Source: Guillardia theta CCMP2712
Taxonomy: Eukaryota > Protista > Cryptophyta
Direction: 5' to 3'
Length of the DNA: 64,000 nucleotides
NCBI RefSeq assembly: GCF_000315625.1
Contig: NW_005434654.1
Coordinates: 190,273-254,272, forward strand
The notes below the pieces were generated by a model that was not told the origin of the DNA, did no database searches, and saw only the letters and a program-made list of their open reading frames with translations. Within the stretch, counting starts at the first letter, position 1, and each line of letters begins with the position of its first letter. Both the position numbers and the translations under genes were made by a program. This document shows positions 18,497 to 61,030 of the stretch, piece after piece.

Positions 18497-18537
<41 letters not shown>

Positions 18538-18608
18538 TAAGATCTGTTGCAACGGGTGATAGGTCGACCACAAAACTCGTCAAACCGAGAGGCACAATCT
18601 TTCGCTAG
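15885..18608 (+). CDS. SHIPPO-repeat (ODF3/STPG-like, PG-rich) ciliary microtubule-associated protein
   Basis: At least nine PGPG.Y-type repeats (PGPGHY, PGPGQY, PGPGEY, PGPQEY, PGPADY, PGPGAY, PGPGTY, PGVGAY), most followed by an SF[GP]-type motif. 5' exons uncertain. Confidence 0.8.
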
Positions 18609-42075: not shown

Positions 42076-44235
42076 ATGCATGACAAGCTGAGCACATTCT
42101 TGACACCTTGTTCCTCCATACAGCCGCAGACCCATTCTCAACATATTTCAGCTGGACCCGACAGGATCGGCAAAGTTGGCAGTCATGCCAGAGGTGAGGC
42201 TCATACACATAACGACACACGAGCTCATGCTATTGTTTCCCAGCGTTCAGACTGGCTCACCATCAACGGGGTTCCTCTGGAGAGGCGGCTGCAGACAGCG
42301 GCCGTCGCAGCTTTCGTCACTGCTCTACCGCTCATGCCGATGAGTGTCATGTGCCACATCTGCTCTCCTTTGCGATCGCTGACGATGCTGGTCAGACTTG
42401 CGATTGTCCTGCTCAGCAGGTGGCCCTACCAGCCTCTGATGATCTTGTACCTCACGTACTGGTAAGGGGGAACCGACGGGCGGGTTGTCAAATGACGTGT
42501 GATGGTTTCAGTTGCTTCTTCGATGCAAGTCCCCAGACCGGGAGGCGGAAGTCAGAATGGTTCCGAAACCTGGGGTTCTGGAAATACTTCAAGGATTTCT
42601 TTCCGATCTCAGTCAAGAAGACTTCGGGTTCTTGTTTGATGAGATTGGTTCGAGCATTGTGAACGATTCGAACGCAGAGCTGGATCCGACGAAGAACTAC
42701 ATCTTCGGGTATCATCCTCACGGCATTATTGGGTGCGGTCTCTATTTTGCTCTTGCTACCTCGTCGGGGTGCAGCCTTGATGAGAGAGCTCTCTCGTTGC
42801 CAGGTTTGGAGCAATCTCCTGTTTTGCGACAAACGCTCATGATCCTAAAACTCTTCTGCCTGGTAGGGTAGAAGGAAAACAGAGATATTCATGGATAGAG
42901 CAGGAGCGAGGGAGCGAGGGAGGAGAGGGGAAGGAGGGGAGGGAGGGAAGAGTCGGCTCATGTTTTCTCTGAAGGACTCGACCTTTATCTTCTCACCCTC
43001 CCAATTCAGTTTCGATTGCCATTCATCCGAGAGGTACTTGGCCGCCTCCCCCATCTCGTATGTGAGCCTCCGTGCAGGTCTGGCTGCTGATGGGCATCTG
43101 CGACAGCTCCAAGGAGACGTTTAAGAGAATTCTGTCCAAGGGTCCAGGATCGTCACTGGCTGTAGTAGTGGGAGGTGCAGCAGAAGCGTTAAAGGTGTGA
43201 AAGCTGCTCTTGCTGAATTCTGGTCGCTGACTGGTAGCAAGTCCTCACCGGGTAAGATCGATCTGACGCTCAATGCACGGAAAGGATTTGTAAGGCAGGT
43301 AAATACGAGGAGAGGAAATCGGGGAGTGCGGGGGAGCGGAGGAGAAAGCACAGGAAAGCGCAGGACAGGATGGAGTGAAAATGAAGCATGGAGGAGGAGG
43401 TGCTGAGTTTGAACTTGACTACAGGCGCTGCTTCATTCTGCTTCTCTTGTTCCTGTGATCGCCTTCGGGGAGACCGACGTGAGCTGATGATGGCATACGG
43501 AGGAGAAAGAAAGACCAACTGAACTTTGTGTCAGGTGTATGGTGTGTTGCAGAACCAGTTCTTCAAGAAAGTACAAGTCAGACTTCAGGTCTGTCTTGTC
43601 TTCTAGAGGAAGAAAGCTTGCTTATAGAAAAGTTTCAGAAATGGTTTGGGTTTGCCATGCCTTTGTTTCATGGCAGAGGAATCTTCAATTACAACTTCGG
43701 TCTCATTCCCCACAGACGTCCTATAACCGTCGTTTTGGGCAGGTGGACAACATTTCATCATCGTTATTTTCTTGTTCTCTTCTTCATTATCTCAATCATC
43801 ATCCCTTCCGTCATCATCATCACCACCATCATCATTATCATCATCATCACCACCACTACCACCACTTTGATTATCACTATGACCACCACTATGACTACCA
43901 TATCTCACGCCATTTCTTCTTCGTGTTCAAACTTTCATGCAGAGCCATCGAGGTACCAACGAATGATTCAGAGGGGAACCCGATTGCAGCCAAAGGTATG
44001 AGAATGACTTTGTTTCTTTCTTGTGACAGGAGCAAAACAGGAGAAAGGTGGCTTGTGGAATCCGATGAGGTGTTTGCTCTGTCGACTTATCGTTAAGCTC
44101 ACTTCTCGTTGATGACAGGGAAGAGCAATAGTTGCAAAGATTCACGCGCAGTATGTGGAAGAACTTCGCCAGTTGTATGACGAGAACAAAGAGAAGTTCT
44201 ATTCTCACTGCAATGCCACCTTGAGTGTAACATAG
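42076..44235 (+). CDS. DGAT2: Diacylglycerol acyltransferase type 2 (DGAT2/MOGAT family), multi-exon
   Basis: [68 protein letters not shown] and [16 protein letters not shown]. Start approximate. Confidence 0.9.
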
Positions 44236-44406: not shown

Positions 44407-46942
44407 TTAAACTTTCCTGCGCACAAGGAATTGATCTCTCCTCTTCATGTACTCCTCGAACGATTCGTTGCTCCTGCATGGAACGGTCACGATGATACTT
44501 CACTCCATCCTCACACTCACGGGATGGGGACAGGAGGAGGAACGTAATCATCCTCAACCTTTGGCTCCTCAATCTTCATTTCTACCTTTGGCTTCGGGGC
44601 CTCAACTGGCTCTACGACCTCAACCTTCTGCGGAGGAGCCGCAAGAATGGCTTCTCTGTGCTTCAAGTAGTCCTCGAACGACTCAGGGGTGGTCCCCTTC
44701 CTTGCCGTGTCCACGAACGCCACAGCCTGTGGCCTCACCTGCTCCTCGTCAACCGCGGCTCGAGGTGGAAGAAGCTTGACTCACCTCCTGCTTGGGTTGA
44801 GCTGGAGCAACTTTCTGCTCGGGCTGCTTGACAACTGCAGGAGCTGCGGAAGGAGGCTTGGTGGCAGGAGCAAAGGAGGAAGCAGGCGAGGTAACAGGGG
44901 CAGGGGCAGACGAAGGGGCAGGGGCAGACGGAGCGGGAGGGGCATAAGGAGCAGGCGATGCAGCAGGAGCTTCAGTTCTGGCACGAGGAGCGTAGCCTGA
45001 CGTCGAGTAGCTGATGCGATTTCCAGACTGAGCTTGAGGAGGTGCTTGAACAGGAGCGGGGGCCGGAGCTGCCGCAGCTGGCGCTGGTGCGGCTGCGGAT
45101 CCTCCCTGGCGTGCCTTCATGTACTCCTCGAACGACATCGCCGGCCTGCCTCCCTCGTCAGCCTCTCCCTTCTCTCCCTCCATCTCAGTCACTCACGGCA
45201 CGTAGGTCTGCTTGGACTTGGGGTCGTTGGGGTCGATCCTGGTCGAGACCGGGTCACGGGTGTGGGCCTTCTTCTCGCCGCCCCAGCCGGCGTCAGGGAG
45301 ATCTCCGGCATCCTGAGCTGGCTTGCCCTGCCAACCGCAAGTCAGATCAAGGCAATAGGTAAGCAAGCTCAGCTACCGCAGGTTCATTGTACTGAGGAGC
45401 GTAGGAAGCAGCAGGGGCGGAGGCGGGGGCCGAGCGAGCTCCGGGAGTGTATCCGCCAGTGGTGGAGTAGCTCACGCCCCTGCTCGGAGCAGCCGAGGAC
45501 TGGGGAGCGTAGGAAGGAGCAGCGCTGTACGAGGCCGAGGCAGCAGGAGCCGGGCTGGCCGAGCGAGCTCCGGGAGTGTATCCGCCAGTGGTGGAGTAGC
45601 TCACGCCCCTGCTCGGAGCAGCCGAGGACTGGGGAGCGTAGGAAGGAGCAGCGCTGTACGAGGCCGAGGCAGCAGGAGCCGGGCTGGCCGAGCGAGCTCC
45701 GGGAGTGTATCCGCCAGTGGTGGAGTAGCTCACGCCCCTGCTCGGAGCAGCCGAGGACTGGGGAGCGTAGGAAGGAGCAGCGCTGTACGAGGCCGAGGCC
45801 GCAGGAGCCGGGCTGGCCGAGCGAGCTCCGGGAGTGTATCCGCCAGTGGTGGAGTAGCTGATGCGTCCGCCAGAGGGAGCTGTGGAGATCAATCAGTTAC
45901 TTTAACTTGGAGTACTTGTCGTGCTACCAGCAGAAGAAGAGCTTGTTTGTTGCTCCGCTACAGAGGTTTGCAAACGCATGAGTATCTGGGAAACGTCTTT
46001 CGAATGGTTGTACCTGCTCTTTTCTTTTGAAGGTACTCTTCGTATGGTGACAAGGCTGCCTCTTGTTTGCTTGTCGGCGACGTGTTGGACTCTCCAGCCA
46101 TCCTTTTCTTCATGTACTCCTCGAAGCTTGTTGCTGGCCTGCTTGCAAGTCACTCACACCGCTCGGCTCAGACTACATGTCTTACGGCACGTAGGTCTGC
46201 TTCGACTTGGGGTCATTCCTGTCCAGGTGGGTTGAGACAGGATCGCGAGTGTGTGCTTTCTTCTCTCCTCCCCATCCTGCGTCTGGCAAATCGCCGGCAT
46301 CCTGAGCAGGCTTGCCGTACGTAGTCGTCTGACTTCTTCCAATGGTTTTCTACCAACATGGTCATGTATCGTCAGAGTTGACAAACATTTCTGTTACAGT
46401 TTCAATGACGCCGCTTGGGGCCACATAGTTCGAAGCTGGGATAGAAAAGACGGGTGATCTAGCCTTTCCTGAGGCTAAGGATTGAGCTCAGCTTGTACTA
46501 CATTTCCAACACACATGCAATACCTTGATTTTGTCTTCGCTTCATATACTCCTCGAATGACTCCGCTGGCCTGTAAAGCCTTGAGTGGAGCTGCAAAGCA
46601 CCCCACAAGAAGAACTCACGGCACGTAGGTCTGCTTGGACTTGGGGTCGTTGGGGTCGAGCCTGGTCGAGACCGGGTCACGGGTGTGGGCCTTCTTCTCG
46701 CCGCCCCAGCCGGCGTCAGGGAGATCTCCGGCATCTTGTGCTGGTCGATAAGAAAGGCGAAGCGAAACTTTCGACGGAGTCTACGAAGAGACAAATTTAG
46801 ATGTGAAAGGAGTTAAGGAATAAAGTGTAGACAGGGACAAGATGCAGTCTTGACATCAACAAGATTGTTCATATTGACTCACTGGAATACACGATCCCAC
46901 GAAAGCAGCAGGCGCAGACGACGAGGACAAAGGGGTGAGCAT
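44407..46942 (-). CDS. Multivalent repeat protein paralog A (3 DAGWGG/TRDP modules, 6 FEEY-type helices, 5 SYST(T/S)GY-type stickers)
   Basis: Exon 1 46942-46883 reads MLTPLSSSSAPAAFVGSCIP, spliced to TPSKVSLRLSYRPAQDAGD. GT-AG introns keep the frame through to ESFEEYMKRRDQFLVRRKV*. Confidence 0.8.
45410..45880 (-). repeat. Coding tandem repeat, 129-bp/43-aa unit, 4 copies
   Basis: SYSTTGGYTPGARS occurs four times in ORF 45347-45892. Confidence 0.95.
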
Positions 46943-46974
46943 GGCGGCGCTGGAGGCTGCGTGGGTGCTGCTGA

Positions 46975-47260
46975 CTAAAGGTTTTACAGCCAAAAAAAAT
47001 TATGTTTTACAGCGAAAAAAACTCCGAAACGCAGTTTACAGCCTACCTGTACCCACCATTCTGGAGATGGTTAAGTCATGACCCCCTTAAATCCCTGACA
47101 AGTACCCACCCAAATTCAGGTTTAGATGTCACCGAGAATAACCCACCTTGGTCCATGCGGGCGGCTGTTGCCCTACCAAGTACCACAAGGTACCCCACCC
47201 CCGGCCCTCCATATCTCGTTGATTCCCTCCCGTCTGGTTTTAGCCAGATGGTATAGTGAA
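46975..47260. promoter_or_regulatory. Upstream region of paralog A with three TTTACAGC motifs and TACCC-rich DNA
   Basis: tttacagc at ~46983, ~47006 and ~47035, within 100 bp of the ATG. Confidence 0.55.
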
Positions 47261-47504
47261 ACTATTACTCAACTTGACAGCGACAGCTGCTGGCTCCATC
47301 ATGTCACGGGGTCCTGACGGGGTCCCGGGCCGGAAGTTGAAGGGCGGGGGGGACCGTCCCGGAAGTCACAGGCCCTTCAGTGTCCGCCAGCAAGCCTACG
47401 GGGGTACAGCCTCTGATGAGAGGCCGGCCCGGCCAGTCACTCCCTGTCCGGCCCGTCAGGTGAGGCTCCGGCCGGGACTCGGGACTCCAGACGGTGGCAG
47501 TCAG

Positions 47505-47560
47505 ACTTTACTCAAAGTTAAGTGAAAGTTAAAAATCAGTACGAGGACAATCAGGAGACG
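47505..47560 (-). repeat. Diverged inverted copy of the element upstream of both intact PP2C genes
   Basis: ctttactcaaagttaag..aatcagtacgaggacaatcaggaga is the reverse complement of tctcctgatcgtcctggtactgat..ttaactttgagtaaag at 22271-22318 and 24599-24646. Confidence 0.7.
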
Positions 47561-48599
47561 GTCGAGGAAGTAGCCTGAGGCCAAACGGCGAGAAGAGAAA
47601 AGACAGCGAGAACCGTGGCAAACCTATTCCTGCCCGGCCAACTGCTGTCCCCCAACCTAACTGATACCTTCACTTAACTGCGCGCAGGACAGTTCCCCCG
47701 CACCATGCCAGCGACATCCTGATCGCTGTGGCCGCCGCCGAAGGAATGAGACTGATCGGACGCATACCGGAACGCACCCGCGATGATGGCAGCGAAGGAC
47801 AGCGACGAAAGATCCTGGACCGGACTCCGGGATGCGTTTGCACGTCGTCGGACCACCTGAGACGCGGAGTCTTGCGAGGCCGACTCCTCGCCGGAGTCGG
47901 AGACTCCCGACCATCTGAGGCTGAGCACGGTGATATTAAGTCACACGGACGGTAAAGGCTCCCGCCCGGCGTGAACGGCGGCGGCCCGGGCCGTCCGGGG
48001 ACGCCGTATCATCGGACTCAGTACGGTCCACTGGCCACGGGGGGCCCCCGCCGGACGGTGACTTAGCAACTCAAAGCCTAGTCACTCATAATTAAGCGGC
48101 GGCACAGCGGCAGTACGGTCAAGTCACTGACGGCGGCGGCCATACGGCGAGACTCGAGAAACTCCGCAACTTAGTTGAATCATAGTACACGGTGACCGTA
48201 CGGGGAGCTCTTGAACTTATCGGAAGTCGGAAGTTCCCCCGCATGCCCGGTGGGCCCGGCCTGAGCCTGCGGCACTGAGGCAGTGCCCGGCCGCCCGGGT
48301 GACTCAAACTGAGTCTGCCCCCGATCAACTTACCGGGCCGCGGCCCGGCCCGCCGCCGGGCGGCGTTGCCGCAAGTTTGTGGCAATGCGCGCTTGAGGAT
48401 TCCTTCTGCATGCTGCTCCTGTCCCGCCCTTCCTTATTACCATACCTCCTCCGTTCTCCACCCCTCCTCTCATCTATCGTTCACCTGTTCTGCATACATT
48501 CCATCTTTCAGGCCCTCCTTCCTTTGAGCCTGAACTCTGAATGCTTCCTTCACATTTCCTGTCCCATCCTCCTCCTCGATCATAGTGTCCTTCCTTTTC

Positions 48600-48698
48600 C
48601 TGATATGATAGACTTCCAACATTTTCTGAGTTAGGTTACTGCTTTTTCTCTGATATGATAGACTTCCAACATTTTCTGAGTTAGGTTACTGCTTTTTC
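48600..48698 (+). repeat. ~50-bp direct duplication in pyrimidine-rich DNA
   Basis: ctgatatgatagacttccaacattttctgagttaggttactgcttttt occurs twice. Confidence 0.9.
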
Positions 48699-49586
48699 GT
48701 CCTCTCCCGTCATCCATTCTTTTCCAAATCTTTTCCGATCTCTGAATTTGCATTTCACCTATATCTCCTTGTTTCCACATCCTTTTCCGTCCTTTCCTTT
48801 CAAGACCTCCTCTGCTTTCCCCCCTTCCCTTTCTCTTTTTCCCTCATTTTCTTTCCTCGCCTTCTTTCCTTGGGATTCCTACTCCTCCACTCTTGAACCA
48901 CCACCATCTCCTCCTTCCAATTGCCCGCTCCAAACTTGTCTTGATACAATCCATACGGCTGGTTACATGAGTGTTCTCCTTGCCATTCTGATTCTTAAGC
49001 CAATAATCATCAAAACACTGAACATTTTACTTTACCGATGCCTCTGGTAGTCTTCTTGCGAATGCTTGCTTACCCTGAATGCTCCTCTACACTGTTTCTC
49101 TCTGCTCTTATTCCGAATCCCGGCTTGGTAACCTTGCTTTATACTTGCTATCTTTTCTTTGTCTCCCCAACCCTATGCTGCTCGCTGATTTGCTTGTGAC
49201 TCTTAAAGCTTCTTCCTTGCCTTCCTCTCCAAATACCTTCCTCTTGATCACCTTCCCGTTCCCAGGCAGTGTGTGCAAATCCATCAGGCCGAGCATCAAG
49301 ATCAAACAGATCAAATTCTTATCATGCACTGATCGTCAGTTGAAGAGAGCACTTTGCATTTTTGGGTATTCGCTGCGTTGTTGTCGGTTCTGATTTCCTC
49401 GTTCTCCACACTGGATTTCCTCGTTCTCAACATAGTCATTTCAAGAAGACACTGGGTGGTTCGAAAGAAAGCGCAATGCTGAAAATTATGTCGAAATTGA
49501 ACACAGTACAATTTTGGGATCAAATCTTCAATGAATAGGAAAAAGAACAGAAGGAGTAACTACGATGCTAATCGAAGACACCTCCT

Positions 49587-52054
49587 TTACTTGCCAGCTG
49601 CTTGTCTGCGCTTGAGGTATTCTTCAAAGGACTCGGCAGGCCTGGTATATCGTTAGAAACTGCTTCACAAAACAAAAAGAAAACATACGGAATGTAGGTC
49701 TGCTTGGACTTGGGGTCGTTGGGGTCGAGCCTGGTCGAGACCGGGTCACGGGTGTGGGCCTTCTTCTCGCCGCCCCAGCCGGCGTCAGGGAGATCTCCGG
49801 CATCCTGTGCTGGCTTGCCCTGCAAACCATGGGTCAAAGATATCCTCAGGGCCAAGCATAATACATACCGCCATAACAGGGGCAGAGCTGTATGAAGAGG
49901 ATCTACTAGGAGTGTAGCCTGACGTCGAGTAGCTGATGCGATTTCCAGTTTGCTGCTGGAGCGAGGCTTGATAAGAAGAGAACGATGGAGCTGGAGCCGG
50001 AGCAGGAGCTGCTGCAGCTGGCGCTGGTGCGGCTGCGGATCCTCCCTGGCGTGCCTTCATGTACTCCTCGAACGACATCGCCGGCCTGCCTCCCTCGTCA
50101 GCCTCTCCCTTCTCTCCCTCCGTCTCAGTCACTCACGGCACGTAGGTCTGCTTGGACTTGGGGTCGTTGGGGTCGATCCTGGTCGAGACCGGGTCACGGG
50201 TGTGGGCCTTCTTCTCGCCGCCCCAGCCGGCGTCAGGGAGATCTCCGGCATCCTGTGCTGGCTTGCCCTGCCAACCGCAAGTCAGATCAAGGCAATAGGT
50301 AAGCAAGCTCAGCTACCGCAGGTTCATTGTACTGAGGAGCGTAGGAAGCAGCAGGGGCGGAGGCGGGGGCCGAGCGAGCTCCGGGAGTGTATCCGCCAGT
50401 GGTAGAGTAGCTCACGCCCCTGCTCGGAGCAGCCGAGGACTGGGGAGCGTAGGAAGGAGCAGCGCTGTACGAGGCCGAGGCAGCAGGAGCCGGGCTGGCC
50501 GAGCGGCCGCGAGGAGTGTATCCGCCAGTGGTGGAGTAGCTGATGCGTCCGCCAGAGGGAGCCGAGGACTGGGGAGCGTAGGAAGGAGCAGCGCTGTACG
50601 AGGCCGAGGCAGCAGGAGCCGGGCTGGCCGAGCGGCCGCGAGGAGTGTATCCGCCAGTGGTGGAGTAGCTGATGCGTCCGCCAGAGGGAGCCGAGGACTG
50701 GGGAGCGTAGGAAGGAGCAGCGCTGTACGAGGCCGAGGCAGCAGGAGCCGGGCTGGCCGAGCGGCCGCGAGGAGTGTATCCGCCAGTGGTGGAGTAGCTG
50801 ATGCGTCCGCCAGAGGGAGCCGAGGACTGGGGAGCGTAGGAAGGAGCAGCGCTGTACGAGGCCGAGGCAGCAGGAGCCGGGCTGGCCGAGCGGCCGCGAG
50901 GAGTGTATCCGCCAGTGGTGGAGTAGCTGATGCGTCCGCCAGAGGGAGCCGAGGACTGGGGAGCGTAGGAAGGAGCAGCGCTGTACGAGGCCGAGGCAGC
51001 AGGAGCCGGGCTGACCGAGCGAGCTCCGGGAGTGTATCCGCCAGTGGTGGAGTAGCTGATGCGTCCGCCTGATGGCGCTGCAGATGGAGAATAAGAAGCA
51101 GCGGGAGATGATGCTGCCGCAGCTGGCGCTGGTGCGGCTGCGGATCCTCCCTGGCGTGCCTTCATGTACTCCTCGAACGACATCGCCGGCCTGCCTCCCT
51201 CGTCAGCCTCTCCCTTCTCTCCCTCCGTCTCAGTCACTCACGGCACGTAGGTCTGCTTGGACTTGGGGTCGTTGGGGTCGACCCTGGTCGAGACCGGGTC
51301 ACGGGTGTGGGCCTTCTTCTCGCCGCCCCAGCCGGCGTCAGGGAGATCTCCGGCATCCTGAGCTGGCTTTCCTCCGTACGAAGGGGCCGCAGCAGCTGCT
51401 GGCTGGGCAGTGGCACCCTGCCTTTTCTTCATGTACTCCTCAAACAGAGATGGCTTCGAATCAGCTGACGGCTCAGCACGAGAGCTCTTCACAGACTTCT
51501 GCAACTTGCAAAATCAGAGAACAATCTTTGTTCAATGTAATGACCAACCAGATCCACAACGCCGCTGCCTGCAGAGAACGACGAACCGGAGATTGGTGCA
51601 ACATATGTTTGCGCAGTCTTGGACCCTGCAGACATTCTCAATGGATGATTTCAACATGTTTCAATTTGCATTACCTCCAGAATTACGTCTCTTCAAATAT
51701 TCTTCAAAGGATTCAGCAGGCCTAACAGATGTCAGATACTTTCTCAGTCACAACGAACTGCTTACGGAACGTAAGTCTGCTTAGCCTTGGGGTCACTTGG
51801 ATCCATCCTGGTAGGCTTCGGATCCCTGGTGTGTGCTTTCTTCTCTCCACCCCAGCCGGCATCAGGTAGATCTCCAGCATCCTGCGCAGGCCGATAGGAC
51901 ATGCGGAGGACAGTGGGGGCAGTGGCCTAGCACAATGTCGGCAAGGGATAGCAAGACAATCTTCTGTCATTGTACTTACCGAGGATACATGAGACCCAGG
52001 AAGCACAGGATTGACAGTGGGAGCAAAGGCTGCAGTTGGCAGCTTGGAGAGCAT
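49587..52054 (-). CDS. Multivalent repeat protein paralog B (4 modules, 5 FEEY helices, 7 stickers)
   Basis: Exon 1 52054-51980 reads MLSKLPTAAFAPTVNPVLPGSHVSS, spliced to ATAPTVLRMSYRPAQDAGD. Last exon PAESFEEYLKRRQAAGK*. Confidence 0.82.
50330..51070 (-). repeat. Coding tandem repeat, 129-bp/43-aa unit, 6 copies
   Basis: Period 129 (e.g. tccgccagtggtggagtagc at 50521 and 50650). Confidence 0.95.
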
Positions 52055-53498
52055 GGCGATCAACAAGCGGCGATGCGGTGAGGAATGGAGGGATCGTGGA
52101 AGGGCAAGATGAAGGGGATACCCCTAAGTGGGGGGAGGAAAAAAAAAAGAGAAAAATAAGGATTTTGGTGGGTGGTCAGGGAAAACGTGGGGTAGTCAAG
52201 TGGGATTCGCCAGGTGGGTACTACCTCTTAGAAGGTCGCGTTTACCCCCTTCCGATTCTCTTTACAGGTCCCAGAAGGGGTTGGTCCTAGGAAATCCAGG
52301 GGGTATTTGAAGGGAAGAAATGGGGTCCAAGGAGGTTCACCAGCCTTGATCTCAGCGTACTTTTACCACCTGTACCTGTCTTTTTGGGGTTATGAGGGGG
52401 TAGGGGGGTATTGTTTCAGGCTCGCCCCAGCACTAGAATCGCCCCCCCGCCTCAGATGTCCTCTAAGAGGTTCCTACCCCAGAACCCTGCCGATTCCCAT
52501 CAACCTGCAGGATTTCTACCCCCCTCCCTCCCCCCCCCACCCCCCACCCCCGGGTCTAGCTCCGGCAGGTATAAAGGGCTGCACCTGGTAAGCAGCTTCA
52601 AGAGAACCTAGGCCTTCGCCCCCGGCCCAGGAACCCGGGAGTTTAGACTCTTTTGGTCGGGGGTAGACACCGAGGGGTAGAATGGGTACCCCTCTATCGA
52701 TGATCGACACCTACTACATGTATTTCACCCACCCGTCGGTGAAAGGGGGCCCTTGCAAGCCAAGCAGTGCTGACCAAATGCCTCCCCCATTCCTTTTATG
52801 TCTAAACGCGTACTGCTTTAGCTCATTTTCGGTAGTGGGCGACCCTAGCCAGTAGAGACGCTTGTAAGGGATGAAGTACTTTAGGAGGTAGGAGGAGATG
52901 GGTACGTGGGTGGGGTCAATTTTTTTCATCTTTTTTTCTTTTTCTTTCTTTTTCTTTCTTTTTCTTTCTTTTTCTTTTCTTTTTTCCTCCTGTAAAAACC
53001 TTGGTGTATGCTTTCTTTTTTCCAACGATGGGATAATGGGGGGTAGGGGTGCTGGTAATATTATAACGTACCCGTGCTTGTGGCTTCTTCCTTCTAAGAG
53101 AATGACCCCGTGATACGAACCCTTTCCTCACGTGTACCCCTCGTTTCCGCCTTGTATCCCCTGTAAAAACAACCCCACCCCACCCTCGTGATGCCTAAAC
53201 TATATCCCACCCTACCTTATTTTCAACGACGCGTTTGGCATCCCCACCCCGTCATCAATGCAAAAGCCATGGTCACACCCCCTCGACGACATCGAATTTG
53301 GGGGTATTCGCAACCCTAGAGATGGCCTTGGGTCTCATGAATCTACCCCTACCCCCTTTTCGACTTCCATAGACCCCGACCCATCGGACTTCACCCTTAG
53401 AACTTTTCCCGAGTCCACCTCAGGTTTCTGACTACCCGTCTCTTTCACCAAAGACTACCCTACCAATCGTCACCTGCTACTCCCGCCGCAATCCCGCC
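52055..53498. promoter_or_regulatory. Divergent (bidirectional) promoter region between paralogs B and C, GGGTA/TACCC-rich
   Basis: Head-to-head ATGs at 52054 (-) and 53499 (+); tttacag at 52261; ctgtaaaaac at 52990 and 53161. Confidence 0.6.
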
Positions 53499-56400
53499 AT
53501 GCTTACGCCGATGCCATCAGCTCCCATGCCGGGCGCATACGCGACGGTGAGGGGAAGATGCAGATCAAATTCGTTTGCCGAAGATTTGAAAACTTGACTG
53601 TTGCCCCTGTGTTATGAAGAAGAAACTTTGTGAAATGATTTGTGCATGAAAATCACTGTTTCTCGTAGTTTCATTTTTTGACGATTCTTGTTGCTCTGTC
53701 AGGCCTCTGCAAGCACTATTCTCCGGATGTCATCTAGACCAGCACAAGACGCAGGAGATCTTCCAGATGCGGGCTGGGGAGGGGAGAAAAAGGCACATAC
53801 AAGAGACCCTGCTTCTACGCAAATCGACCCGGCGGACCCTAAGTCAAAACAGACATACATTCCGTAAGTTGCCTTCTGCAAGATCAGGATGCTTCTTGCT
53901 GAAACTTTCAAAACAAAGACCCACGGAAACCTTCGAGGAGTATCTCAAACGCAGACAGAGCTCTGGTGAGTACTGTGATGCAACGCGCCAGTAGCCATGA
54001 CAGGTGGTTGCCCAGCCCAGAAAGCACCGAATAGCGTTATCGCCCCAGTGTCAGGGCCCTTGCGTGCTGCATCAAGTGGTGTTGTGGATTTGGTGAGTTC
54101 GTTGACGGCCATGAAATTCTCGCTGATGCCTGGGTTGCAGAAGTCGGTGGCAAAATCAAGGAGCGAGAGTTCGAACGTTGAGCCCTCGACCAGACAGTAT
54201 GCATGCATGACACTATGGTGTGACAGTGTGATGGTCTCTCTTCAGGCAAACGGTTTCCTTCGACGAGTACATGAAAAGAAGAAATCAAGGTAAATAATTG
54301 AATCTCAACACGCAGTTGCAAAACTTGCCACACTGTTCACACTGCAAAACAACAGGGGAGAAGGCAAAACCTGCAAAGGCGATGGGTGAAGAAATGAGTA
54401 TATTCGAGAAATACATGCAGAACAAACAGAATCAAGCATCATCAGTAACTGTATGTGTATTGCTATCTCAATCTCCTGTAACCTGCCTTTTTGCAGAATG
54501 CACAGGATGCCGGAGATCTCCCTGACGCCGGCTGGGGCGGCGAGAAGAAGGCCCACACCCGTGACCCGGTCTCGACCAGGATCGACCCCAACGACCCCAA
54601 GTCCAAGCAGACCTACGTGCCGTGAGTGACTGAGACGGAGGGAGAGAAGGGAGAGGCTGACGAGGGAGGCAGGCCGGCGATGTCGTTCGAGGAGTACATG
54701 AAAAGACGACAAGATCAACTGAATGATTCACTTCAGGCAACATCAACAAACTCCAAGCCACAAACATCTACACCGCAAGCTAATCGAGTAAGCTACTCCA
54801 CCACTGGCGGATACACTCCCGGAGCTCGCTCGGCCAGTCCGGCTCCTACTGCCTCGGCCTCGTACAGCGCTGCTCCTTCCTACGCTCCCCAGTCCTCGGC
54901 TCCTCCGAGCAGAGGCGTGAGCTACTCCACCACTGGCGGATACACTCCTCGCGGCCGCTCGGCCAGCCCGGCTCCTGCTGCCTCGGCCTCGTACGGCTCA
55001 GAGCTGCCTTCAGCGAACTCCGAGTCCTCGGCTCCCTCTGGCGGACGCATCAGCTACTCCACCACTGGCGGATACACTCCCGGAGCTCGCTCGGCCAGCC
55101 CGGCTCCTGCTGCCTCGGCCTCGTACAGCGCTGCTCCTTCCTACGCTCCCCAGTCCTCGGCTCCCTCTGGCGGACGCATCAGCTACTCCACCACTGGCGG
55201 ATACACTCCCGGAGCTCGCTCTGCCAGCCCGGCTCCTGCTGCCTCGGCCTCGTACGGCTCAGAGCAGCCTTCAGCGAACTCCGAGTCCTCGGCTCCCTCT
55301 GGCGGACGCATCAGCTACTCCACCACTGGCGGATACACTCCTCGCGGCCGCTCGGCCAGCCCGGCTCCTGCGGCCTCGGCCTCGTACAGCGCTGCTCCTT
55401 CCTACGCTCCCCAGTCCTCGGCTCCACCGAGCAGGGGCGTGAGCTACTCCACCACTGGCGGATACACTCCTCGCGGCCGCTCTGCCAGCCCGGCTCCTGC
55501 TGCCTCGGCCTCGTACGGCTCAGAGCAGCCTTCAGCGAACTCCGAGTCCTCGGCTCCCTCTGGCGGACGCATCAGCTACTCCACCACTGGCGGATACACT
55601 CCTCGCGGCCGCTCGGCCAGCCCGGCTCCTGCTGCCTCGGCCTCGTACAGCGCTGCTCCTTCCTACGCTCCCCAGTCCTCGGCTCCCTCTGGCGGACGCA
55701 TCAGCTACTCCACCACTGGCGGATACACTCCCGGAGCTCGCTCGGCCAGCCCGGCTCCTGCTGCCTCGGCCTCGTACGGCTCAGAGCAGCCTTCAGCGAA
55801 CTCCGAGTCCTCGGCTCCCTCTGGCGGACGCATCAGCTACTCCACCACTGGCGGATACACTCCCGGAGCTCGCTCGGCCAGCCCGGCTCCTGCTGCCTCG
55901 GCCTCGTACAGCGCTGCTCCTTCCTACGCTCCCCAGTCCTCGGCTGCTCCGAGCAGGGGCGTGAGCTACTCCACCACTGGCGGATACACTCCCGGAGCTC
56001 GCTCGGCCCCCGCCTCCGCCCCTGCTTCTTCCTACGCTCCTCAGTACAATGAACCTGCGGTAGCTGAGCTTGCTTACCTATTGCCTTGATCTGACTTGCG
56101 GTTGGCAGGGCAAGCCAGCACAGGATGCCGGAGATCTCCCTGACGCCGGCTGGGGCGGCGAGAAGAAGGCCCACACCCGTGACCCGGTCTCGACCAGGGT
56201 CGACCCCAACGACCCTAAGTCCAAGCAGACCTACGTGCCGTGAGTGACTGAGACGGAGGGAGAGAAGGGAGAGGCTGACGAGGGAGGCAGGCCGGCGATG
56301 TCGTTCGAGGAGTACATGAAAAGACGACAGGATCAGAGCTATAGTGCCCTGGGTAGTAGCAGAAGTTCTCCCAATCTTTCAGCTTCGACAGCAGTCAAGT

Positions 56401-57006
56401 TCTCTCAGCCAGAAGACAATTCTCGCCCTGTTTCTGCAGCTGCAGGCAAGCGCATCAGCTACTCAACTACGGGAGGTTACGTTCCTCGAGGAAGGGCGAG
56501 AGACGATGAAGGGAGCTCTGACGGTTCCAACCCTCCTTTGTCTCCTTGTACAAGCTGAAATGATTTCCAGATCTAATCTCTTCAGCTCGAAATGAAGACT
56601 CTGAGGACGGATCTGTATCTGTCCTTAAGAACTCAAGGCCGGTTCATTTCTATCATGACTATTTATATCAGCGTCAAAAGTCAGGTGTCAACATGCAGGC
56701 GATCACACGTCCTTCTTCCTGACTTGATCGTTTGCTTTACAGTCATGGCAAAAATCTCTTCGGGATCGGAACAGAACGACCAGGTCGTGTATTGAGCGAA
56801 TCTTGTTGCTTTGTGAAAAAAAAGTGCAGGCGTTCAAGGCACAAGCGGCGCAGTGGTTGTACGACAAGAGATACTTCCAAACAGCAAGCACGAAGAAAAG
56901 CAATGCTCCGTGAGTGATTTGGTTCAAAGCTGCTGCTCCTGAGTTTTCTCCCAGGGATGCAGAGACGTTTGAAGACTACATGAAGAGAAGAGAAGTCGTG
57001 AAATGA
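53499..57006 (+). CDS. Multivalent repeat protein paralog C (3 modules, 6 FEEY-type helices, 11 stickers)
   Basis: Exon 1 MLTPMPSAPMPGAYAT spliced to ASASTILRMSSRPAQDAGD; final exon DAETFEDYMKRREVVK*. Exons at 56520-56910 are less certain. Confidence 0.8.
54785..56045 (+). repeat. Coding tandem repeat, 10 units with alternating 129/132-bp (261-bp higher-order) structure
   Basis: Spacers alternate SAAPSYAPQ and GSE[QL]PSANSE; gtacggctcagagc recurs at 54991 and 55252. Confidence 0.95.
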
Positions 57007-58225: not shown

Positions 58226-61030
58226 ATGGCGGGACAAGGCGGCGGCGGCGGCGAGGGAGCACAGGGTGCGGTCGGGGGATCGAGACGAGATGTAGAGAAG
58301 CAGGGGAAGACAACAAAGCAGGATGAGGATGATGTTGTGAAGAGAGACATGCTGTCAACGCTCGTCATGCTGCTCACGAACAAACATAGCGCAGAGCTCT
58401 ATGACAGGCAGGTGAAAACGTTAATGAGAATCAGCAAGGCTTATAGCGACGGGTTCTTCATTGCAGACATTCATAAGCTCGTCCAAATTTTCAAACATGT
58501 TGGGGGTCGGGTGGATCAAGGGATGACAGAGTTTGTTGAGCCTCTTTGCGATCTGTTGAACATTTGCTCCAAGCCCTTTGTTAAACAGATAGCGAGCGAG
58601 GAATACAGAAACTTTGACTCTTTGAGCGAAATCGTACAAGTAATCTGCTCCTTTATATCGTCTAAGATTCCTGAGATTCAGCTTTCGGCGGCAGCAGCCA
58701 TGATCGCATATTCAACGACTGACGAAGGGTTGCCCGCTAGCATTAGTTTTCGGAATCAAATTCTCGAAAGCAGCAGCGCCATTGAAAACATCGGACAGGT
58801 CTTTCAGAGGGGGGAACTCGACAAGAAGGTACTGCTCCAACTTCTACAGCTCCTGCTCGAACTCTCTCGCAGAAACGAACTGGCAGCGCAGATTTCACAG
58901 CAAAATTGTTTGGAGTACGCCGTGGAAGCTCTTCTGCATGGTTTCAAATCACATATATGCGTGATATCGGTAGAGATTCTCTGGAATTGTATGGAGAATG
59001 TCCCGTCTGCCGCTGAGCGACTTGGTACCAAGAGGACGGCAGACGTGTTTGCTCAGGTCATCACAGACCTGTTGAAGGAAGGTTATCGATCGCAAGACAA
59101 GGAGTTGAGGAATGAGTTGCTGCTGGTGCTGCATTACTTGGCGGAGAAGGTCGTTATCTCCTCTCCATGTCAGATTTCTGATGCTGACTATGTTTCTGCC
59201 CTGCAGGATAAAATCCATGAATTCTTTATCGCCAACGGTTTCCTGGAAACCTTGTTGACTACTTCATCTGCCAGCGAGAGTGAAGTAAGAAACGATGTAA
59301 AGTCGTCGGTTTTGACCTCCTCGAGCGAAGACTTTGAGATGAAGCGGACCATGATGCACATAATTTGCCTGCTGTCCGAGAACCCAGCTTGCATGGATAG
59401 AATCAAACAACACCACTCCTTTATTCCAGGCCTGGTCTTGCACTTGGACGAAAGGTATGTCAACCATCTTGCAAGGAAGAAGTTCTCCCGGCAACAACAG
59501 AGACAGCTCCAGATCGAATGTTTGTCTTCTCTCGTCATCCTCGTGCCGAAATTTCCGGATCTCTTCATCCAGCTCGGAGGCCTCGCCATCATCCTCCAAT
59601 TTCTTTCTGAACAGTCGGAGGAAAGTCTTCGTTCCGGTTGCCTTCGTCTCCTCATTCAGTGTGCAAAGCTTCCTGGCTTCCAAGAAGAGCTTGGAGGGAA
59701 GGCTGTGGCCATGATGATCTCGTTGGTAAAGGAGCAGAGCATGCATCCGTTCCATATCCGGCAGGATGCACTTAGCGTCCTTGCTCGACTGTGTGAGAAT
59801 TGCCCTGCCAACCAGAACATCGTCTCGGCGTTGGAGGGCCTGGATGCATTGATAGAGAACATTGAGTGGACGGTGGAGGAGACGATCAGGATGGAGCCGA
59901 TGTCTCTGACTGCTGTGGATGCAGTCTGGTGCATCGTGTGCGGGAACAGAGAGAACGAGAGGTTGTTCGAGCAGAAGGGAGGGCTAGAGGCTTTGGTGCT
60001 GCTGCTTGACAAGTGCCCCCGTTTCTTGCAATTCCTGGTCGTGAGTTGCATGTGCCAACTGGTTGAGAATCAGGGCCTGCTGGAGCAGCTTAGGACTCTG
60101 AGGGAGCCAGTCGCCAACAAGGCGGTGACGCACCTGCTGATCAGGCTGTGGAGGGAAGAGGAAGACTACATCCTGCAGGAGGAAAGGAAAGAGTTGGAGA
60201 TCAGAGGCGTCAATCTGAGGAGAGAGGAAGACATGAGGTCGGGAGAGCTCGTTGAGCACCTGACCCTGAAGAACCTGCACACGAAGATCCATTCCCTGCT
60301 TGTCAAACTCGGTTTTGACACGGCGAGGGACGAGTTGGACACAGAGGAGAAGAAGAAGCTCTTCCAGATCGAGAAGTATCTGCAGGCGCATGAAGCCACT
60401 CTGTGGCAGGCGTTCAACAAGGAGCTAGCAGAGGAAGGGATCCGGCCTGTCACACCTGACCGCAGGATTCTGGAGAGGAGGGTCGATGAGAACATGGCAG
60501 CCCAGGAGGAGCTCGAGGAGCAACTGGAAAATATGGACGCACAGCATGAGGCGGGAGAGCAGGAGGAGCTGCGACAATTCTTTCAGCAGATCCATCAGGA
60601 GGAGCTTGCCAGGAAGAACACGGTGAAGCGAGTCAGTCAGGCCCTGCCGACGTCGACGAGGACCAAGATCATCGTGGACTCGCACAAGTCGCAGATCTAT
60701 CCCCCGCTGATCGCAACGACAAGAGGGCTGGAGGAAAAGACCAACGACGGGCGGGGGAGCCGAACAGAGAGGAAGGACAACGTGGAGGAGTTCCTGCGGG
60801 ACTCCGCAACATCGAAGCTGGTAAGTGCCCCTTCCTTCCTTTCGTGTTGCTCCTGCTCGCCTCCCTCCTCCTTCCTCCCTGCGCCATCCCCGTTGATGTT
60901 GCTCACCGGCGCTTGTCAGGTGGCATCCAGACCTACAAGTGCAAGGCCGAAGAGTGGGAAGAGCGTTGAAGGCAGTCAGACCCCAGCTGGGGCCGGAGTG
61001 AACGCAGCCATCGCATTACGAGCTTCTTAG
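58226..61030 (+). CDS. CFAP69: Cilia- and flagella-associated protein 69 (ARM-repeat)
   Basis: ARM-like helical protein with GYRSQDKELRNELL, EDFEMKR, LIRLWREEE and EEGIRPVTPDRR. Probable in-frame introns at ~59150-59207 and 60821-60920. Confidence 0.75.
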   Translation: MAGQGGGGGEGAQGAVGGSRRDVEKQGKTTKQDEDDVVKRDMLSTLVMLLTNKHSAELYDRQVKTLMRISKAYSDGFFIADIHKLVQIFKHVGGRVDQGMTEFVEPLCDLLNICSKPFVKQIASEEYRNFDSLSEIVQVICSFISSKIPEIQLSAAAAMIAYSTTDEGLPASISFRNQILESSSAIENIGQVFQRGELDKKVLLQLLQLLLELSRRNELAAQISQQNCLEYAVEALLHGFKSHICVISVEILWNCMENVPSAAERLGTKRTADVFAQVITDLLKEGYRSQDKELRNELLLVLHYLAEKVVISSPCQISDADYVSALQDKIHEFFIANGFLETLLTTSSASESEVRNDVKSSVLTSSSEDFEMKRTMMHIICLLSENPACMDRIKQHHSFIPGLVLHLDERYVNHLARKKFSRQQQRQLQIECLSSLVILVPKFPDLFIQLGGLAIILQFLSEQSEESLRSGCLRLLIQCAKLPGFQEELGGKAVAMMISLVKEQSMHPFHIRQDALSVLARLCENCPANQNIVSALEGLDALIENIEWTVEETIRMEPMSLTAVDAVWCIVCGNRENERLFEQKGGLEALVLLLDKCPRFLQFLVVSCMCQLVENQGLLEQLRTLREPVANKAVTHLLIRLWREEEDYILQEERKELEIRGVNLRREEDMRSGELVEHLTLKNLHTKIHSLLVKLGFDTARDELDTEEKKKLFQIEKYLQAHEATLWQAFNKELAEEGIRPVTPDRRILERRVDENMAAQEELEEQLENMDAQHEAGEQEELRQFFQQIHQEELARKNTVKRVSQALPTSTRTKIIVDSHKSQIYPPLIATTRGLEEKTNDGRGSRTERKDNVEEFLRDSATSKLVSAPSFLSCCSCSPPSSFLPAPSPLMLLTGACQVASRPTSARPKSGKSVEGSQTPAGAGVNAAIALRAS

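What the first reader, a model, noticed from the sequence alone, without database searches (positions are those of the whole stretch)
44407..57006. Three-gene cluster of multivalent sticker-spacer proteins: candidate cryptophyte pyrenoid/Rubisco-linker system
Seen in sequence: after splicing, paralogs A(-), B(-) and C(+) combine 10 copies of a ~42-aa PAQDAGDLPDAGWGGEKKAHTRDP..DPKSKQTY[VI]P module, 17 short [ST]FEEY[ML]K[KR]R-type amphipathic helices and 23 SYST(T)GGY[TV]P-type motifs, joined by S/A/P-rich disordered spacers with no enzyme domain. Each begins with a transit-peptide-like leader. Established knowledge: pyrenoid matrix linkers EPYC1 (Chlamydomonas) and PYCO1 (Phaeodactylum) are sequence-unrelated, lineage-specific disordered repeat proteins with aromatic/basic stickers. 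I know of no characterised cryptophyte equivalent. Inference: these genes encode a phase-separating scaffold family with tunable valency, possibly condensing red-type Rubisco.
Basis: partly seen in the sequence, partly recalled or inferred. Interest (0 to 1): 0.92.

Follow-up and report, generated by a model that had tools for sequence, protein, structure and literature searches.

The report
Candidate cryptophyte pyrenoid linker genes
Three neighbouring, expressed genes of the alga Guillardia theta encode long disordered proteins that string together copies of an ancient red-lineage peptide unit and tyrosine motifs, making them good but unproven candidates for the glue that packs Rubisco into the pyrenoid.

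Summary
The window is Guillardia theta CCMP2712. Three intron-rich genes (A-, B-, C+; 44407-57006) carry exactly 10 M modules, 23 tyrosine motifs and 17-18 FEEYMKRR-type helices. RNA contigs confirm the splicing of the 5' part of B and most of C. The public model GUITHDRAFT_105364 equals my B model from residue 66.

New points:
- M and the helix H form one ~57-aa "MH" unit, joined across a 51-nt intron.
- The unit is not a cryptophyte orphan. It is the PYP1 family: Pyropia yezoensis protein 1 in red algae, an abundant 2-3-unit family in haptophytes, and 1- to 4-unit forms in cryptophytes.
- Old M copies show saturated synonymous change with an invariant 23-residue core, so M is under purifying selection.
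- The tyrosine motif is also conserved in other cryptophytes and resembles the PYCO1 GTGYNP sticker.

The proteins are basic (pI 9.2-9.6), Cys-free and predicted disordered apart from the H helix.

Rubisco binding and pyrenoid location remain untested. The leaders end like G. theta transit peptides, but their signal-peptide part is weak. Relatives also include monovalent forms. The linker reading is plausible (about 0.4), not shown.

The parts
44407..46942 (-). Gene A, 12 predicted exons, 641 aa (624 aa if the 51-nt exon 45907-45957 is skipped). It has a leader, 3 MH units, 3 extra helices, 4 tandem tyrosine motifs plus one isolated one, and an A/P-rich tail. Exons: 46883-46942, 46620-46780, 46524-46570, 46398-46435, 46186-46349, 46014-46138, 45907-45957, 45377-45879, 45197-45327, 44785-45145, 44521-44738, 44407-44473.
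   Evidence: Spliced by hand from GT-AG sites by analogy with B and C. It was not covered by reads, and the 27-nt intron 45880-45906 is doubtful.
49587..52054 (-). Gene B (GUITHDRAFT_105364), 10 exons, 674 aa. It has a leader, 4 MH units, 1 extra helix, and 6 tandem tyrosine motifs plus one isolated one. Exons: 51980-52054, 51766-51926, 51675-51721, 51549-51625, 51242-51498, 50317-51190, 50137-50267, 49869-50085, 49689-49819, 49587-49641.
   Evidence: The four 5' introns are seen as joints in RNA contigs of X1, X2 and X4, and the contigs reach 52097-52118. An in-frame stop lies at 52124-52126, read. Residues 66-674 are identical to P0033, the public model.
53499..57006 (+). Gene C, 15 exons, 896 aa. 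It has a leader, 3 MH units, 4 extra helices, and 10 tandem tyrosine motifs plus one isolated one. Exons: 53499-53546, 53703-53863, 53919-53965, 54016-54092, 54141-54196, 54246-54289, 54356-54450, 54497-54621, 54673-56059, 56109-56239, 56291-56523, 56571-56684, 56743-56783, 56830-56909, 56955-57006.
   Evidence: Eleven of the 14 introns are listed as GT-AG joints in RNA contigs. Of the other three, 56910-56954 is supported by read loose ends. 56240-56290 and 56784-56829 are inferred by frame and by analogy.
53727..53864 (+). M module C1, an old copy
   Evidence: 24-26 synonymous differences against 7-11 non-synonymous ones from the other copies
54488..54622 (+). M module C2
56103..56240 (+). 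M module C3
51765..51902 (-). M module B1, an old copy
51241..51378 (-). M module B2, part of the exon used as query for the homology searches
50136..50273 (-). M module B3
49688..49825 (-). M module B4
46619..46756 (-). M module A1
46185..46322 (-). M module A2, an old copy
45196..45333 (-). M module A3
45428..45859 (-). Tandem array of the 43-aa tyrosine-motif repeat in A (3.3 x 129 nt)
50368..51069 (-). Tandem array of the 43-aa tyrosine-motif repeat in B (5.4 x 129 nt)
54791..56008 (+). Tandem array of the tyrosine-motif repeat in C (9.3 x 129 nt, organised as 4.7 x 261 nt)
52055..53498 (.). Intergenic region between the divergently transcribed genes B and C, presumably a shared promoter region. 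No RNA contig depth from 52200 to 53399.
   Evidence: depth table; the promoter role is inference only

Best explanation
Genes A, B and C encode plastid-directed, intrinsically disordered, multivalent proteins that most likely act as scaffold (linker) proteins of the pyrenoid matrix.

Each chain carries:
- 3-4 copies of an ancient ~57-aa PYP1-type unit. This is an extended Asp/Pro/Lys-rich segment ending in the short amphipathic helix ..SFEEYMKRR.. .
- Extra copies of the helix alone.
- A central block of 4-10 repeats of 43 aa, each with an Arg-flanked tyrosine motif (R-I-S-Y-S-T-T-G-G-Y-T-P-R-G-R).

Proposed mechanism, all of it inferred:
- The conserved unit docks on a very conserved stromal partner, most likely form ID Rubisco.
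- Several units per chain cross-link holoenzymes.
- The Tyr/Arg repeats add self-association, as the GTGYNP motif does in the diatom linker PYCO1.
- The 87-aa single-unit paralog GUITHDRAFT_122876 could cap or tune the network.

Shown here: the gene structures, expression, the unit's conservation and purifying selection, the disorder plus the helix, and the basic charge. Inferred: location, partner and condensation.
For: Architecture and physical chemistry:
- There are 3-4 MH units plus extra helices. The tyrosine motifs are spaced 43-44 aa. The mature pI is 9.2-9.6, there is no Cys, and Ala/Ser/Pro/Gly/Tyr dominate.
- In the AlphaFold2 model of the unit only the FEEY..RR helix is ordered, with pLDDT about 80. 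The ESM Atlas model has pLDDT 0.38.

Constraint:
- The three old M copies differ from the rest at 17-26 of 28.5 synonymous sites but only 6-12 of 94.5 non-synonymous sites. The first 23 residues are invariant in all ten copies.
- Across red algae, haptophytes and cryptophytes the core T-R-D-P..P-T..D-P-N-D-P-K.K-Q..I....S-F.-.Y is nearly invariant. This argues for a specific and highly conserved partner.

Plastid context:
- Haptophyte relatives carry canonical bipartite leaders with the ..SAF motif.
- The leaders of A, B, C and P0003 end in ..LRL/..LRM. G. theta LHC presequences end similarly, in ..LRMQ/..KMQ.
- A divergent G. theta relative on contig C17 has a textbook bipartite leader.
- Mature PYP1 starts just before the unit by protein sequencing, and its cDNA primer begins MAFVSGFT (PMC4501640).

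Likeness to a proven red-type linker:
- PYCO1 is basic (pI 10.03) and disordered. It uses a GTGYNP tyrosine sticker for self-association plus short helical Rubisco-binding motifs (PMC10288592).
- The tyrosine motif here (GGYTP) recurs as PGYDP / GGYDP / AYNP in otherwise different repeats of other cryptophyte-type proteins that also start with one MH unit (P0157, P0160, P0024, P0158).

Expression:
- Spliced transcripts are found in three runs.
- Spliced reads of the single-unit paralog are also present.

PYP1 is reported as an SDS-resistant dimer (PMC6966212). This is compatible with self-associating stickers.
Against: - There is no direct evidence of Rubisco binding, pyrenoid location or phase separation.
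- The signal-peptide part of the A/B/C leaders is weakly hydrophobic. The maximum 10-residue Kyte-Doolittle mean is 1.66, 1.16 and 0.94. Two bona fide G. theta plastid leaders score 2.2-2.5. Import into the four-membrane plastid is therefore not assured.
- The unit also exists as monovalent small proteins (PYP1, P0003). The PYP1 authors report a homolog in Chondrus crispus, which by my own knowledge lacks a pyrenoid. So the unit's basic role may be something other than condensation.
- None of the few hits that carry a source name was from a diatom, although diatoms have the same Rubisco form. Absence cannot be concluded, because most hits are unnamed.
- The PYP1 authors likened the protein to LEA proteins.
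Confidence: 0.4

Rival explanations
1. The proteins are plastid stromal multivalent adaptors for a conserved partner other than Rubisco. Candidates are other Calvin-cycle enzymes in the manner of CP12, the activase CbbX, or a membrane or nucleoid surface. The MH unit would be a general docking peptide, and A/B/C would cluster that partner.
For: The unit is conserved as a small monovalent protein in a red alga and in G. theta itself. This fits a regulator or adaptor better than a linker. The PYP1 authors report a homolog in Chondrus crispus. The leader and family context point to the plastid but do not name a partner.
Against: The defining CP12 features are absent. There is no Cys in mature A/B/C, and no CP12 or any other Pfam match. 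High valency combined with a Tyr/Arg low-complexity block is the pattern of condensate scaffolds. In algal plastids the best known such condensate is the Rubisco matrix.
Confidence: 0.25
2. The proteins are LEA-like hydrophilins, that is, stress-protective disordered proteins. The amphipathic helix would bind membranes or shield proteins, and repeat number would scale the protection.
For: The PYP1 authors describe LEA-like physicochemical properties (PMC4501640). The proteins are hydrophilic and disordered, with one short amphipathic helix per unit.
Against: The unit is widespread in permanently submerged marine haptophytes and cryptophytes. At least 530 related proteins were found, many from marine sequence catalogues. 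The 35-residue core is conserved far more tightly than a mere hydrophilic character would need. No LEA or dehydrin Pfam family matches.
Confidence: 0.1
3. The proteins are not plastid proteins. They are cytosolic or cell-surface structural low-complexity proteins, for example of the inner periplast component or the ejectisome. On this reading the short leaders are not functional bipartite signals.
For: The N-terminal 10-15 residues of A/B/C are polar, rich in Pro and Ser, and score low in hydrophobicity. Ser/Ala/Pro/Tyr-rich repeats are common in structural proteins.
Against: The leaders end in the same ..LRM context as G. theta plastid presequences and have an aromatic residue where the +1 Phe is expected. 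Haptophyte relatives have canonical plastid leaders, and haptophytes have neither periplast nor ejectisomes (the latter point is my own knowledge). PYP1 in a red alga is N-terminally processed.
Confidence: 0.1

Closest known systems
PYP1 (Pyropia yezoensis protein 1) and its uncharacterised relatives in red algae and haptophytes
   Same: The unit is the same. The PYP1 peptides given in the papers are ALEGGKSSGGGEATRDPEPT, ATRDPEPTAVDPN and DPKGKQQAIHVAPSF. Together they tile the GGGEATRDPEPT-x-x-DPNDPKGKQQAIH-x-x-x-SF core of the haptophyte units. They share the T-R-D-P..P-T..D-P-N-D-P-K-x-K-Q..I....S-F core with the G. theta units. PYP1 and G. theta GUITHDRAFT_122876 are both precursors of about 82-87 aa with one unit.
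   Different: A, B and C are 641-896 aa, carry 3-4 units and extra helices, and have a long tyrosine-repeat block. The cryptophyte units also have the extra conserved N-terminal half P-A-Q-D-A-G-D-L-P-x-x-G-W-G. PYP1 has been studied only as a bioactive food peptide, and its role in the alga is unknown.
PYCO1, the pyrenoid linker of the diatom Phaeodactylum tricornutum (form ID Rubisco)
   Same: PYCO1 is a basic, disordered tandem-repeat protein with two kinds of stickers. Its G-x-G-Y-x-P tyrosine motif (GTGYNP) drives self-association. The counterpart here is GGYTP, and in relatives PGYDP. Its Rubisco-binding elements are short and helical.
   Different: A/B/C have no KWSPRGGS and no AAEWGSMNQ motif. 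No sequence homology is shown. PYCO1 lacks the PYP1-type unit as far as its published motifs show. Rubisco binding is demonstrated for PYCO1 and untested here.
EPYC1 (Chlamydomonas) and CsLinker (Chlorella)
   Same: They follow the same sticker-spacer logic: a short helix repeated 5-6 times in a disordered basic chain, at spacings that can bridge Rubiscos.
   Different: They are unrelated in sequence and bind green-type Rubisco. They have no second (tyrosine) sticker class, and their stickers are not conserved between lineages, whereas the MH unit is.

Membership tests
PYP1-like (MH unit) family | Core motif [AH]-T-R-D-P-x-P-T-x-[ILV]-D-P-N-D-P-K-[SGA]-K-Q-x-x-I-[PH]-x-x-x-S-F-x-[ED]-Y-[LM] | tested here: met
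   In the alignment of 46 units, 4 columns are invariant and 13 more are at least 90% conserved. The PYP1 peptides from PMC4501640, PMC6966212 and PMC5436292 fit the core. The phmmer search found 32 relatives among 1.8 billion representatives.
PYP1-like (MH unit) family | Small precursor with one unit behind a cleaved plastid presequence | tested here: not met
   A, B and C have 3-4 units and 641-896 aa. The paralog GUITHDRAFT_122876 (87 aa) does meet this feature. A, B and C are therefore expanded derivatives, not typical members.
Pyrenoid Rubisco linkers (functional class: EPYC1, CsLinker, PYCO1) | Largely disordered chain with repeated short structured stickers at spacings of about 20-120 residues | tested here: met
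   Helices in the N-terminal part are 26-83 residues apart, and tyrosine motifs are 43-44 residues apart. In the AlphaFold2 model only the helix is ordered. The criteria come from PMC11570498.
Pyrenoid Rubisco linkers (functional class: EPYC1, CsLinker, PYCO1) | Basic isoelectric point | tested here: met
   The mature pI is 9.18, 9.61 and 9.45. PYCO1 has pI 10.03.
Pyrenoid Rubisco linkers (functional class: EPYC1, CsLinker, PYCO1) | Location in the plastid stroma or pyrenoid matrix | tested here: inconclusive
   The transit-peptide end matches G. theta plastid presequences, but the signal-peptide part is weak. No localisation data exist.
Pyrenoid Rubisco linkers (functional class: EPYC1, CsLinker, PYCO1) | Direct multivalent binding to Rubisco and demixing with it | not testable with these tools
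   This needs biochemistry or a full L8S8 complex prediction. Nothing here speaks for or against it.
PYCO1 homologs | KWSPRGGS small-subunit sticker and AAEWGSMNQ large-subunit helix | tested here: not met
   The only Trp residues are the one in each M module (G-W-G-G) and one near the C-terminus of C (Q-W-L-Y). None lies in a KWSP or EW context.
PYCO1 homologs | Repeated GTGYNP tyrosine sticker | tested here: inconclusive
   A similar motif, G-G-Y-T-P, occurs 23 times, and P-G-Y-D-P occurs in relatives. A six-residue likeness in low-complexity sequence cannot show homology.
CP12 | Cysteine pairs and the AWD-VEEL core | tested here: not met
   There is no Cys in mature A, B or C and no Pfam CP12 match.

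The most novel reading that the evidence does not exclude
The PYP1-type MH unit is the shared Rubisco-binding sticker of a large part of the red plastid lineage (red algae, haptophytes, cryptophytes). On this reading, pyrenoid matrices in these groups are built by changing its valency. The unit would be one copy that dimerises in Pyropia, two to three copies in haptophytes, and three to four copies fused to a PYCO1-like tyrosine block in cryptophytes. That would be the first linker element conserved across algal phyla. All linkers known so far are lineage-specific.
Probability: 0.3. Interest if true: 0.9.

Novelty: new variant of a known kind. Interest (0 to 1): 0.72.

Why it matters
In the reviews and papers searched here, Rubisco linkers are described for Chlamydomonas, Chlorella, one diatom and a hornwort, with a candidate in a chlorarachniophyte. 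None share sequence. No linker is described for cryptophytes, haptophytes or red algae, although haptophytes are major ocean carbon fixers. This locus supplies concrete candidates that can be cloned. It also supplies a short motif conserved across phyla, which can be tested directly against form ID Rubisco. In addition it gives a possible cellular role to PYP1, a red-algal protein known only from food-peptide pharmacology. If the motif binds Rubisco, it would show that at least one pyrenoid sticker is ancient rather than reinvented in each lineage. It would also offer a compact tag for engineering red-type Rubisco condensates.

Tried and rejected
- Complex prediction. I ran G. theta RbcL + RbcS + the mature single MH unit (P0003 residues 27-87). 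The verdict was 'no answer', score 0.05. One L and one S chain also cannot form the holoenzyme interfaces.
- Pfam on exon products and on eight relatives: nothing credible.
- PDB sequence search with the unit and with its profile: no relative. The best hit had E = 0.012 and is a chance 24-residue match. So the unit is not one of the unassigned chains in solved cryptophyte photosystem or Rubisco structures.
- ESM Atlas. The hits to 'PSII 12 kDa extrinsic protein', diatom hypotheticals, phycoerythrin alpha and CP12 clusters vanished when the leader was removed. They reflect the presequence, not the unit.
- P0009 and P0029 from the phmmer list are unrelated repeat proteins.
- Microsynteny. A PP2C gene lies next to the homolog on an environmental cryptophyte contig, and two PP2C genes lie at 22-26 kb in the window. 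They share only generic 33% PP2C similarity over 105 residues. I rejected this as a link.
- Rubisco genes are not in the nuclear assembly.
- A paper search for the gene identifiers found nothing.
- An upstream signal-peptide exon is ruled out for B. The transcript contigs stop 43-64 nt upstream of the ATG, and an in-frame stop lies just beyond.
Full report
**Identity of the window**

The assembly has 87,145,349 bases in 669 contigs, and the window is C20:190273-254272. The product of the central gene is in public databases as hypothetical protein GUITHDRAFT_105364 of Guillardia theta CCMP2712, on a 934,522-base scaffold.

**The observation**

A six-frame scan finds three kinds of element:
- 10 M modules (P-A-Q-D-A-G-D-L-P-D-A-G-W-G-G-E-K-K-A-H-T-R-D-P ... 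D-P-K-S-K-Q-T-Y-[VI]-P);
- 23 S-Y-S-T-(T)-G-G-Y-[TVA]-P motifs;
- 13 strict FEEY[ML]K helices.

With a looser helix pattern on the spliced proteins the helix count is 6+5+7. Tandem Repeats Finder reports 129-nt arrays of 3.3, 5.4 and 9.3 copies. These counts and the coordinates 44407-57006 match the finding exactly.

**Gene models**

I laid contigs and reads of four runs on 51000-56999. Three runs, evidently transcriptomes, show 15 listed GT-AG joints:
- four are in the 5' part of B;
- eleven are in C;
- the skipped stretches are 44-66 nt, with one of 156 nt.

The raw-read RNA run lies on opposite strands over B and C, as expected for divergent genes.

Using these joints and the same intron types elsewhere, I built three models:
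- A: 12 exons, 641 aa;
- B: 10 exons, 674 aa;
- C: 15 exons, 896 aa.

Residues 66-674 of B equal the public 609-aa model letter for letter. The public model is simply truncated at the N-terminus. The transcript contigs of B end 43-64 nt upstream of the ATG at 52054. An in-frame stop lies at 52124-52126. So B has no hidden upstream coding exon.

Gene A has no read support. Its 27-nt intron is doubtful, and a 134-nt intron that skips a 51-nt exon keeps the frame equally well.

**Anatomy**

Each protein has:
- a leader of 25-34 residues;
- an N-terminal group of MH units and free helices;
- a central block of 4-10 repeats of 43 residues carrying R-I-S-Y-S-T-T-G-G-Y-T-P-R-G-R;
- one or two C-terminal MH units plus a final helix.

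The mature proteins have pI 9.2-9.6 and no cysteine. Ala, Ser, Pro, Gly and Tyr dominate. No Pfam domain matches. In an AlphaFold2 model of the unit, made with a 46-sequence alignment, only the F-E-E-Y-L-K-R-R-Q-A-Q helix is ordered (pLDDT about 80). The rest has no regular structure.

**Selection**

Seven M copies are almost identical in DNA, as are their flanking introns. This points to recent duplication or gene conversion. Three copies (C1, B1, A2) are old:
- they differ from the others at 17-26 of 28.5 synonymous sites;
- they differ at only 6-12 of 94.5 non-synonymous sites;
- the first 23 residues are identical in all ten copies.

The M module is therefore under strong purifying selection.

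**Copies in the genome**

The M module occurs only here and on the 5-kb contig C491. C491 carries two inverted, identical copies of an 87-aa single-unit gene, GUITHDRAFT_122876. The loose ends of RNA reads at the M modules are exactly the spliced junction of that gene. So it is expressed and spliced too.

The strict helix pattern occurs ten times in the genome, nine of them in this cluster. The tenth, on contig C17, lies in a gene with a textbook bipartite plastid leader, a G-F-G-G-G stretch and ..I-P-T-G-P-A-S-F-E-E-Y-M-K-K-R. It is a divergent relative.

**Relatives elsewhere**

An exhaustive phmmer search of 1.8 billion representatives with one B exon gave 32 hits. Two of them are spurious.

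- *Cryptophytes.* Named hits are Rhodomonas abbreviata and Hanusia phi.
- *Haptophytes.* A second group reads G-G-K-G-F-G-G-G-E-A-T-R-D-P-x-P-T-x-I-D-P-N-D-P-K-G-K-Q-Q-A-I-H-K-A-E-S-F-A-[ED]-Y-L-A-[KR]-R. It has at least 530 members, mostly with two units. Its named members are Phaeocystis and Scyphosphaera.
- *Red algae.* A text search for G-G-E-A-T-R-D-P led to papers on PYP1 of Pyropia yezoensis.

What the PYP1 papers give:
- The N-terminus of the mature protein, found by protein sequencing, is ALEGGKSSGGGEATRDPEPT.
- Two further peptides are ATRDPEPTAVDPN and DPKGKQQAIHVAPSF.
- The cDNA primers translate to M-A-F-V-S-G-F-T at the start and ..K-K-K-A-E-G-K at the end, and the RT-PCR product is 246 bp.
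- PYP1 is described as an SDS-resistant dimer of about 10 kDa.
- The authors report homologs in Chondrus crispus and Emiliania huxleyi and call the protein LEA-like.

PYP1 is thus a single-unit member of this family with a cleaved presequence. In the alignment of 46 units, 4 columns are invariant and 13 more are at least 90% conserved. No solved structure contains the unit.

**The tyrosine motif is conserved too**

Environmental cryptophyte-type proteins (P0157 of 556 aa, P0160 of 390 aa, P0158, P0024) begin with one MH unit. Up to nine repeats of G-R-K-I-D-Y-G-R-P-G-Y-D-P-K-N-R follow, set in spacers unlike those of G. theta. The diatom linker PYCO1 uses GTGYNP as its self-association sticker. 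It uses separate short helical motifs to bind Rubisco. The likeness is in motif and logic. PYCO1's KWSPRGGS and AAEWGSMNQ motifs are absent here.

**Targeting**

G. theta LHC presequences end ..L-R-M-Q..K-M-Q or ..S-M-Q. One complete leader reads M-L-R-T-V-A-A-F-A-C-V-A-S-A-V-S-F-S-P... The leaders of B, C and the single-unit protein end ..L-R-M, and that of A ends ..L-R-L. Each has Phe or Tyr where the +1 aromatic residue of stromal proteins is expected.

Their first 10-15 residues are polar, however. The best 10-residue hydropathy is 1.66, 1.16 and 0.94. The values are 2.2-2.5 for two genuine G. theta leaders and 1.75-2.0 for the haptophyte relatives. Plastid import is likely for the family and plausible, but not assured, for A, B and C.

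**Interpretation**

The family context is plastidial and the chain is a multivalent disordered base. The sticker is conserved over a very long time, and the second sticker is of the PYCO1 type. Together these make a pyrenoid-matrix scaffold the best single reading.

Several things keep it at about 0.4:
- no binding or location data exist;
- the signal-peptide part of the leaders is weak;
- monovalent relatives exist;
- a homolog is reported in a red alga that, by my own knowledge, lacks a pyrenoid.

The rivals are an adaptor for another stromal partner, an LEA-like protectant, or a non-plastid structural protein. The complex prediction with RbcL and RbcS gave no answer and is not used.

**Surroundings**

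The neighbours are unrelated:
- a DGAT fragment at 43.5 kb;
- a CFAP69-like gene at 58.2-61.0 kb;
- a UCH protease gene at 32.2-37.8 kb;
- two PP2C genes at 22.4-25.9 kb;
- a SHIPPO-repeat gene at 17.3-18.6 kb.

**Earlier notes of the scan**

Earlier notes on this genome did not touch this locus.

Noticed in passing
G000:C491 (loci L009 1354-1733 +, L011 1306-1583 -): A 5-kb unplaced contig carries two identical, inverted copies of the 87-aa single-unit gene GUITHDRAFT_122876. This could be a real inverted duplication or an assembly artefact. Spliced RNA reads of this gene account for many of the reads that land on the M modules of the window.
   Followed up: partly
G000:C17:521526-521543 (locus L025, ORF 1117-1872 -): A gene with a canonical bipartite plastid leader (M-L-R-T-S-A-V-A-V-T-A-L-A-I-A-E-A-F-A-P..) followed by G-F-G-G-G and ..P-A-S-F-E-E-Y-M-K-K-R. 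It is a divergent relative of the MH unit that lacks the T-R-D-P / D-P-N-D-P-K core.
   Followed up: partly
window 51980-52054 and 51766-51926: The public model GUITHDRAFT_105364 starts at an internal Met inside the first M module. RNA contigs support two further 5' exons that add 65 residues, including the leader.
   Followed up: yes
window 22388-23509 and 24716-25885 (+): Two tandem PP2C phosphatase genes. An environmental cryptophyte contig (L035) has a PP2C gene directly beside its MH/tyrosine-repeat gene. The two share only generic 33% similarity, so no conserved linkage is shown.
   Followed up: yes
window 58226-61030 (+), 32168-37795 (-), 17283-18608 (+), 43528-44001 (+): Neighbouring genes are a CFAP69-like ARM-repeat protein, a large UCH-type deubiquitinase, a SHIPPO (sperm-tail PG-rich) repeat protein and a diacylglycerol acyltransferase fragment. 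None is related to the cluster.
   Followed up: no
window 54622-54672, 56240-56290, 51191-51241, 50086-50136; 56060-56108, 50268-50316, 45328-45376: Two intron types (51 nt and 49 nt) are letter-for-letter identical between paralogs. The duplications or gene conversions that spread the units therefore carried the introns along.
   Followed up: partly
window 45880-46013 (-): In gene A, either a 27-nt intron follows a 51-nt exon, or a single 134-nt intron skips that exon. Both keep the reading frame, and no reads were laid here.
   Followed up: no
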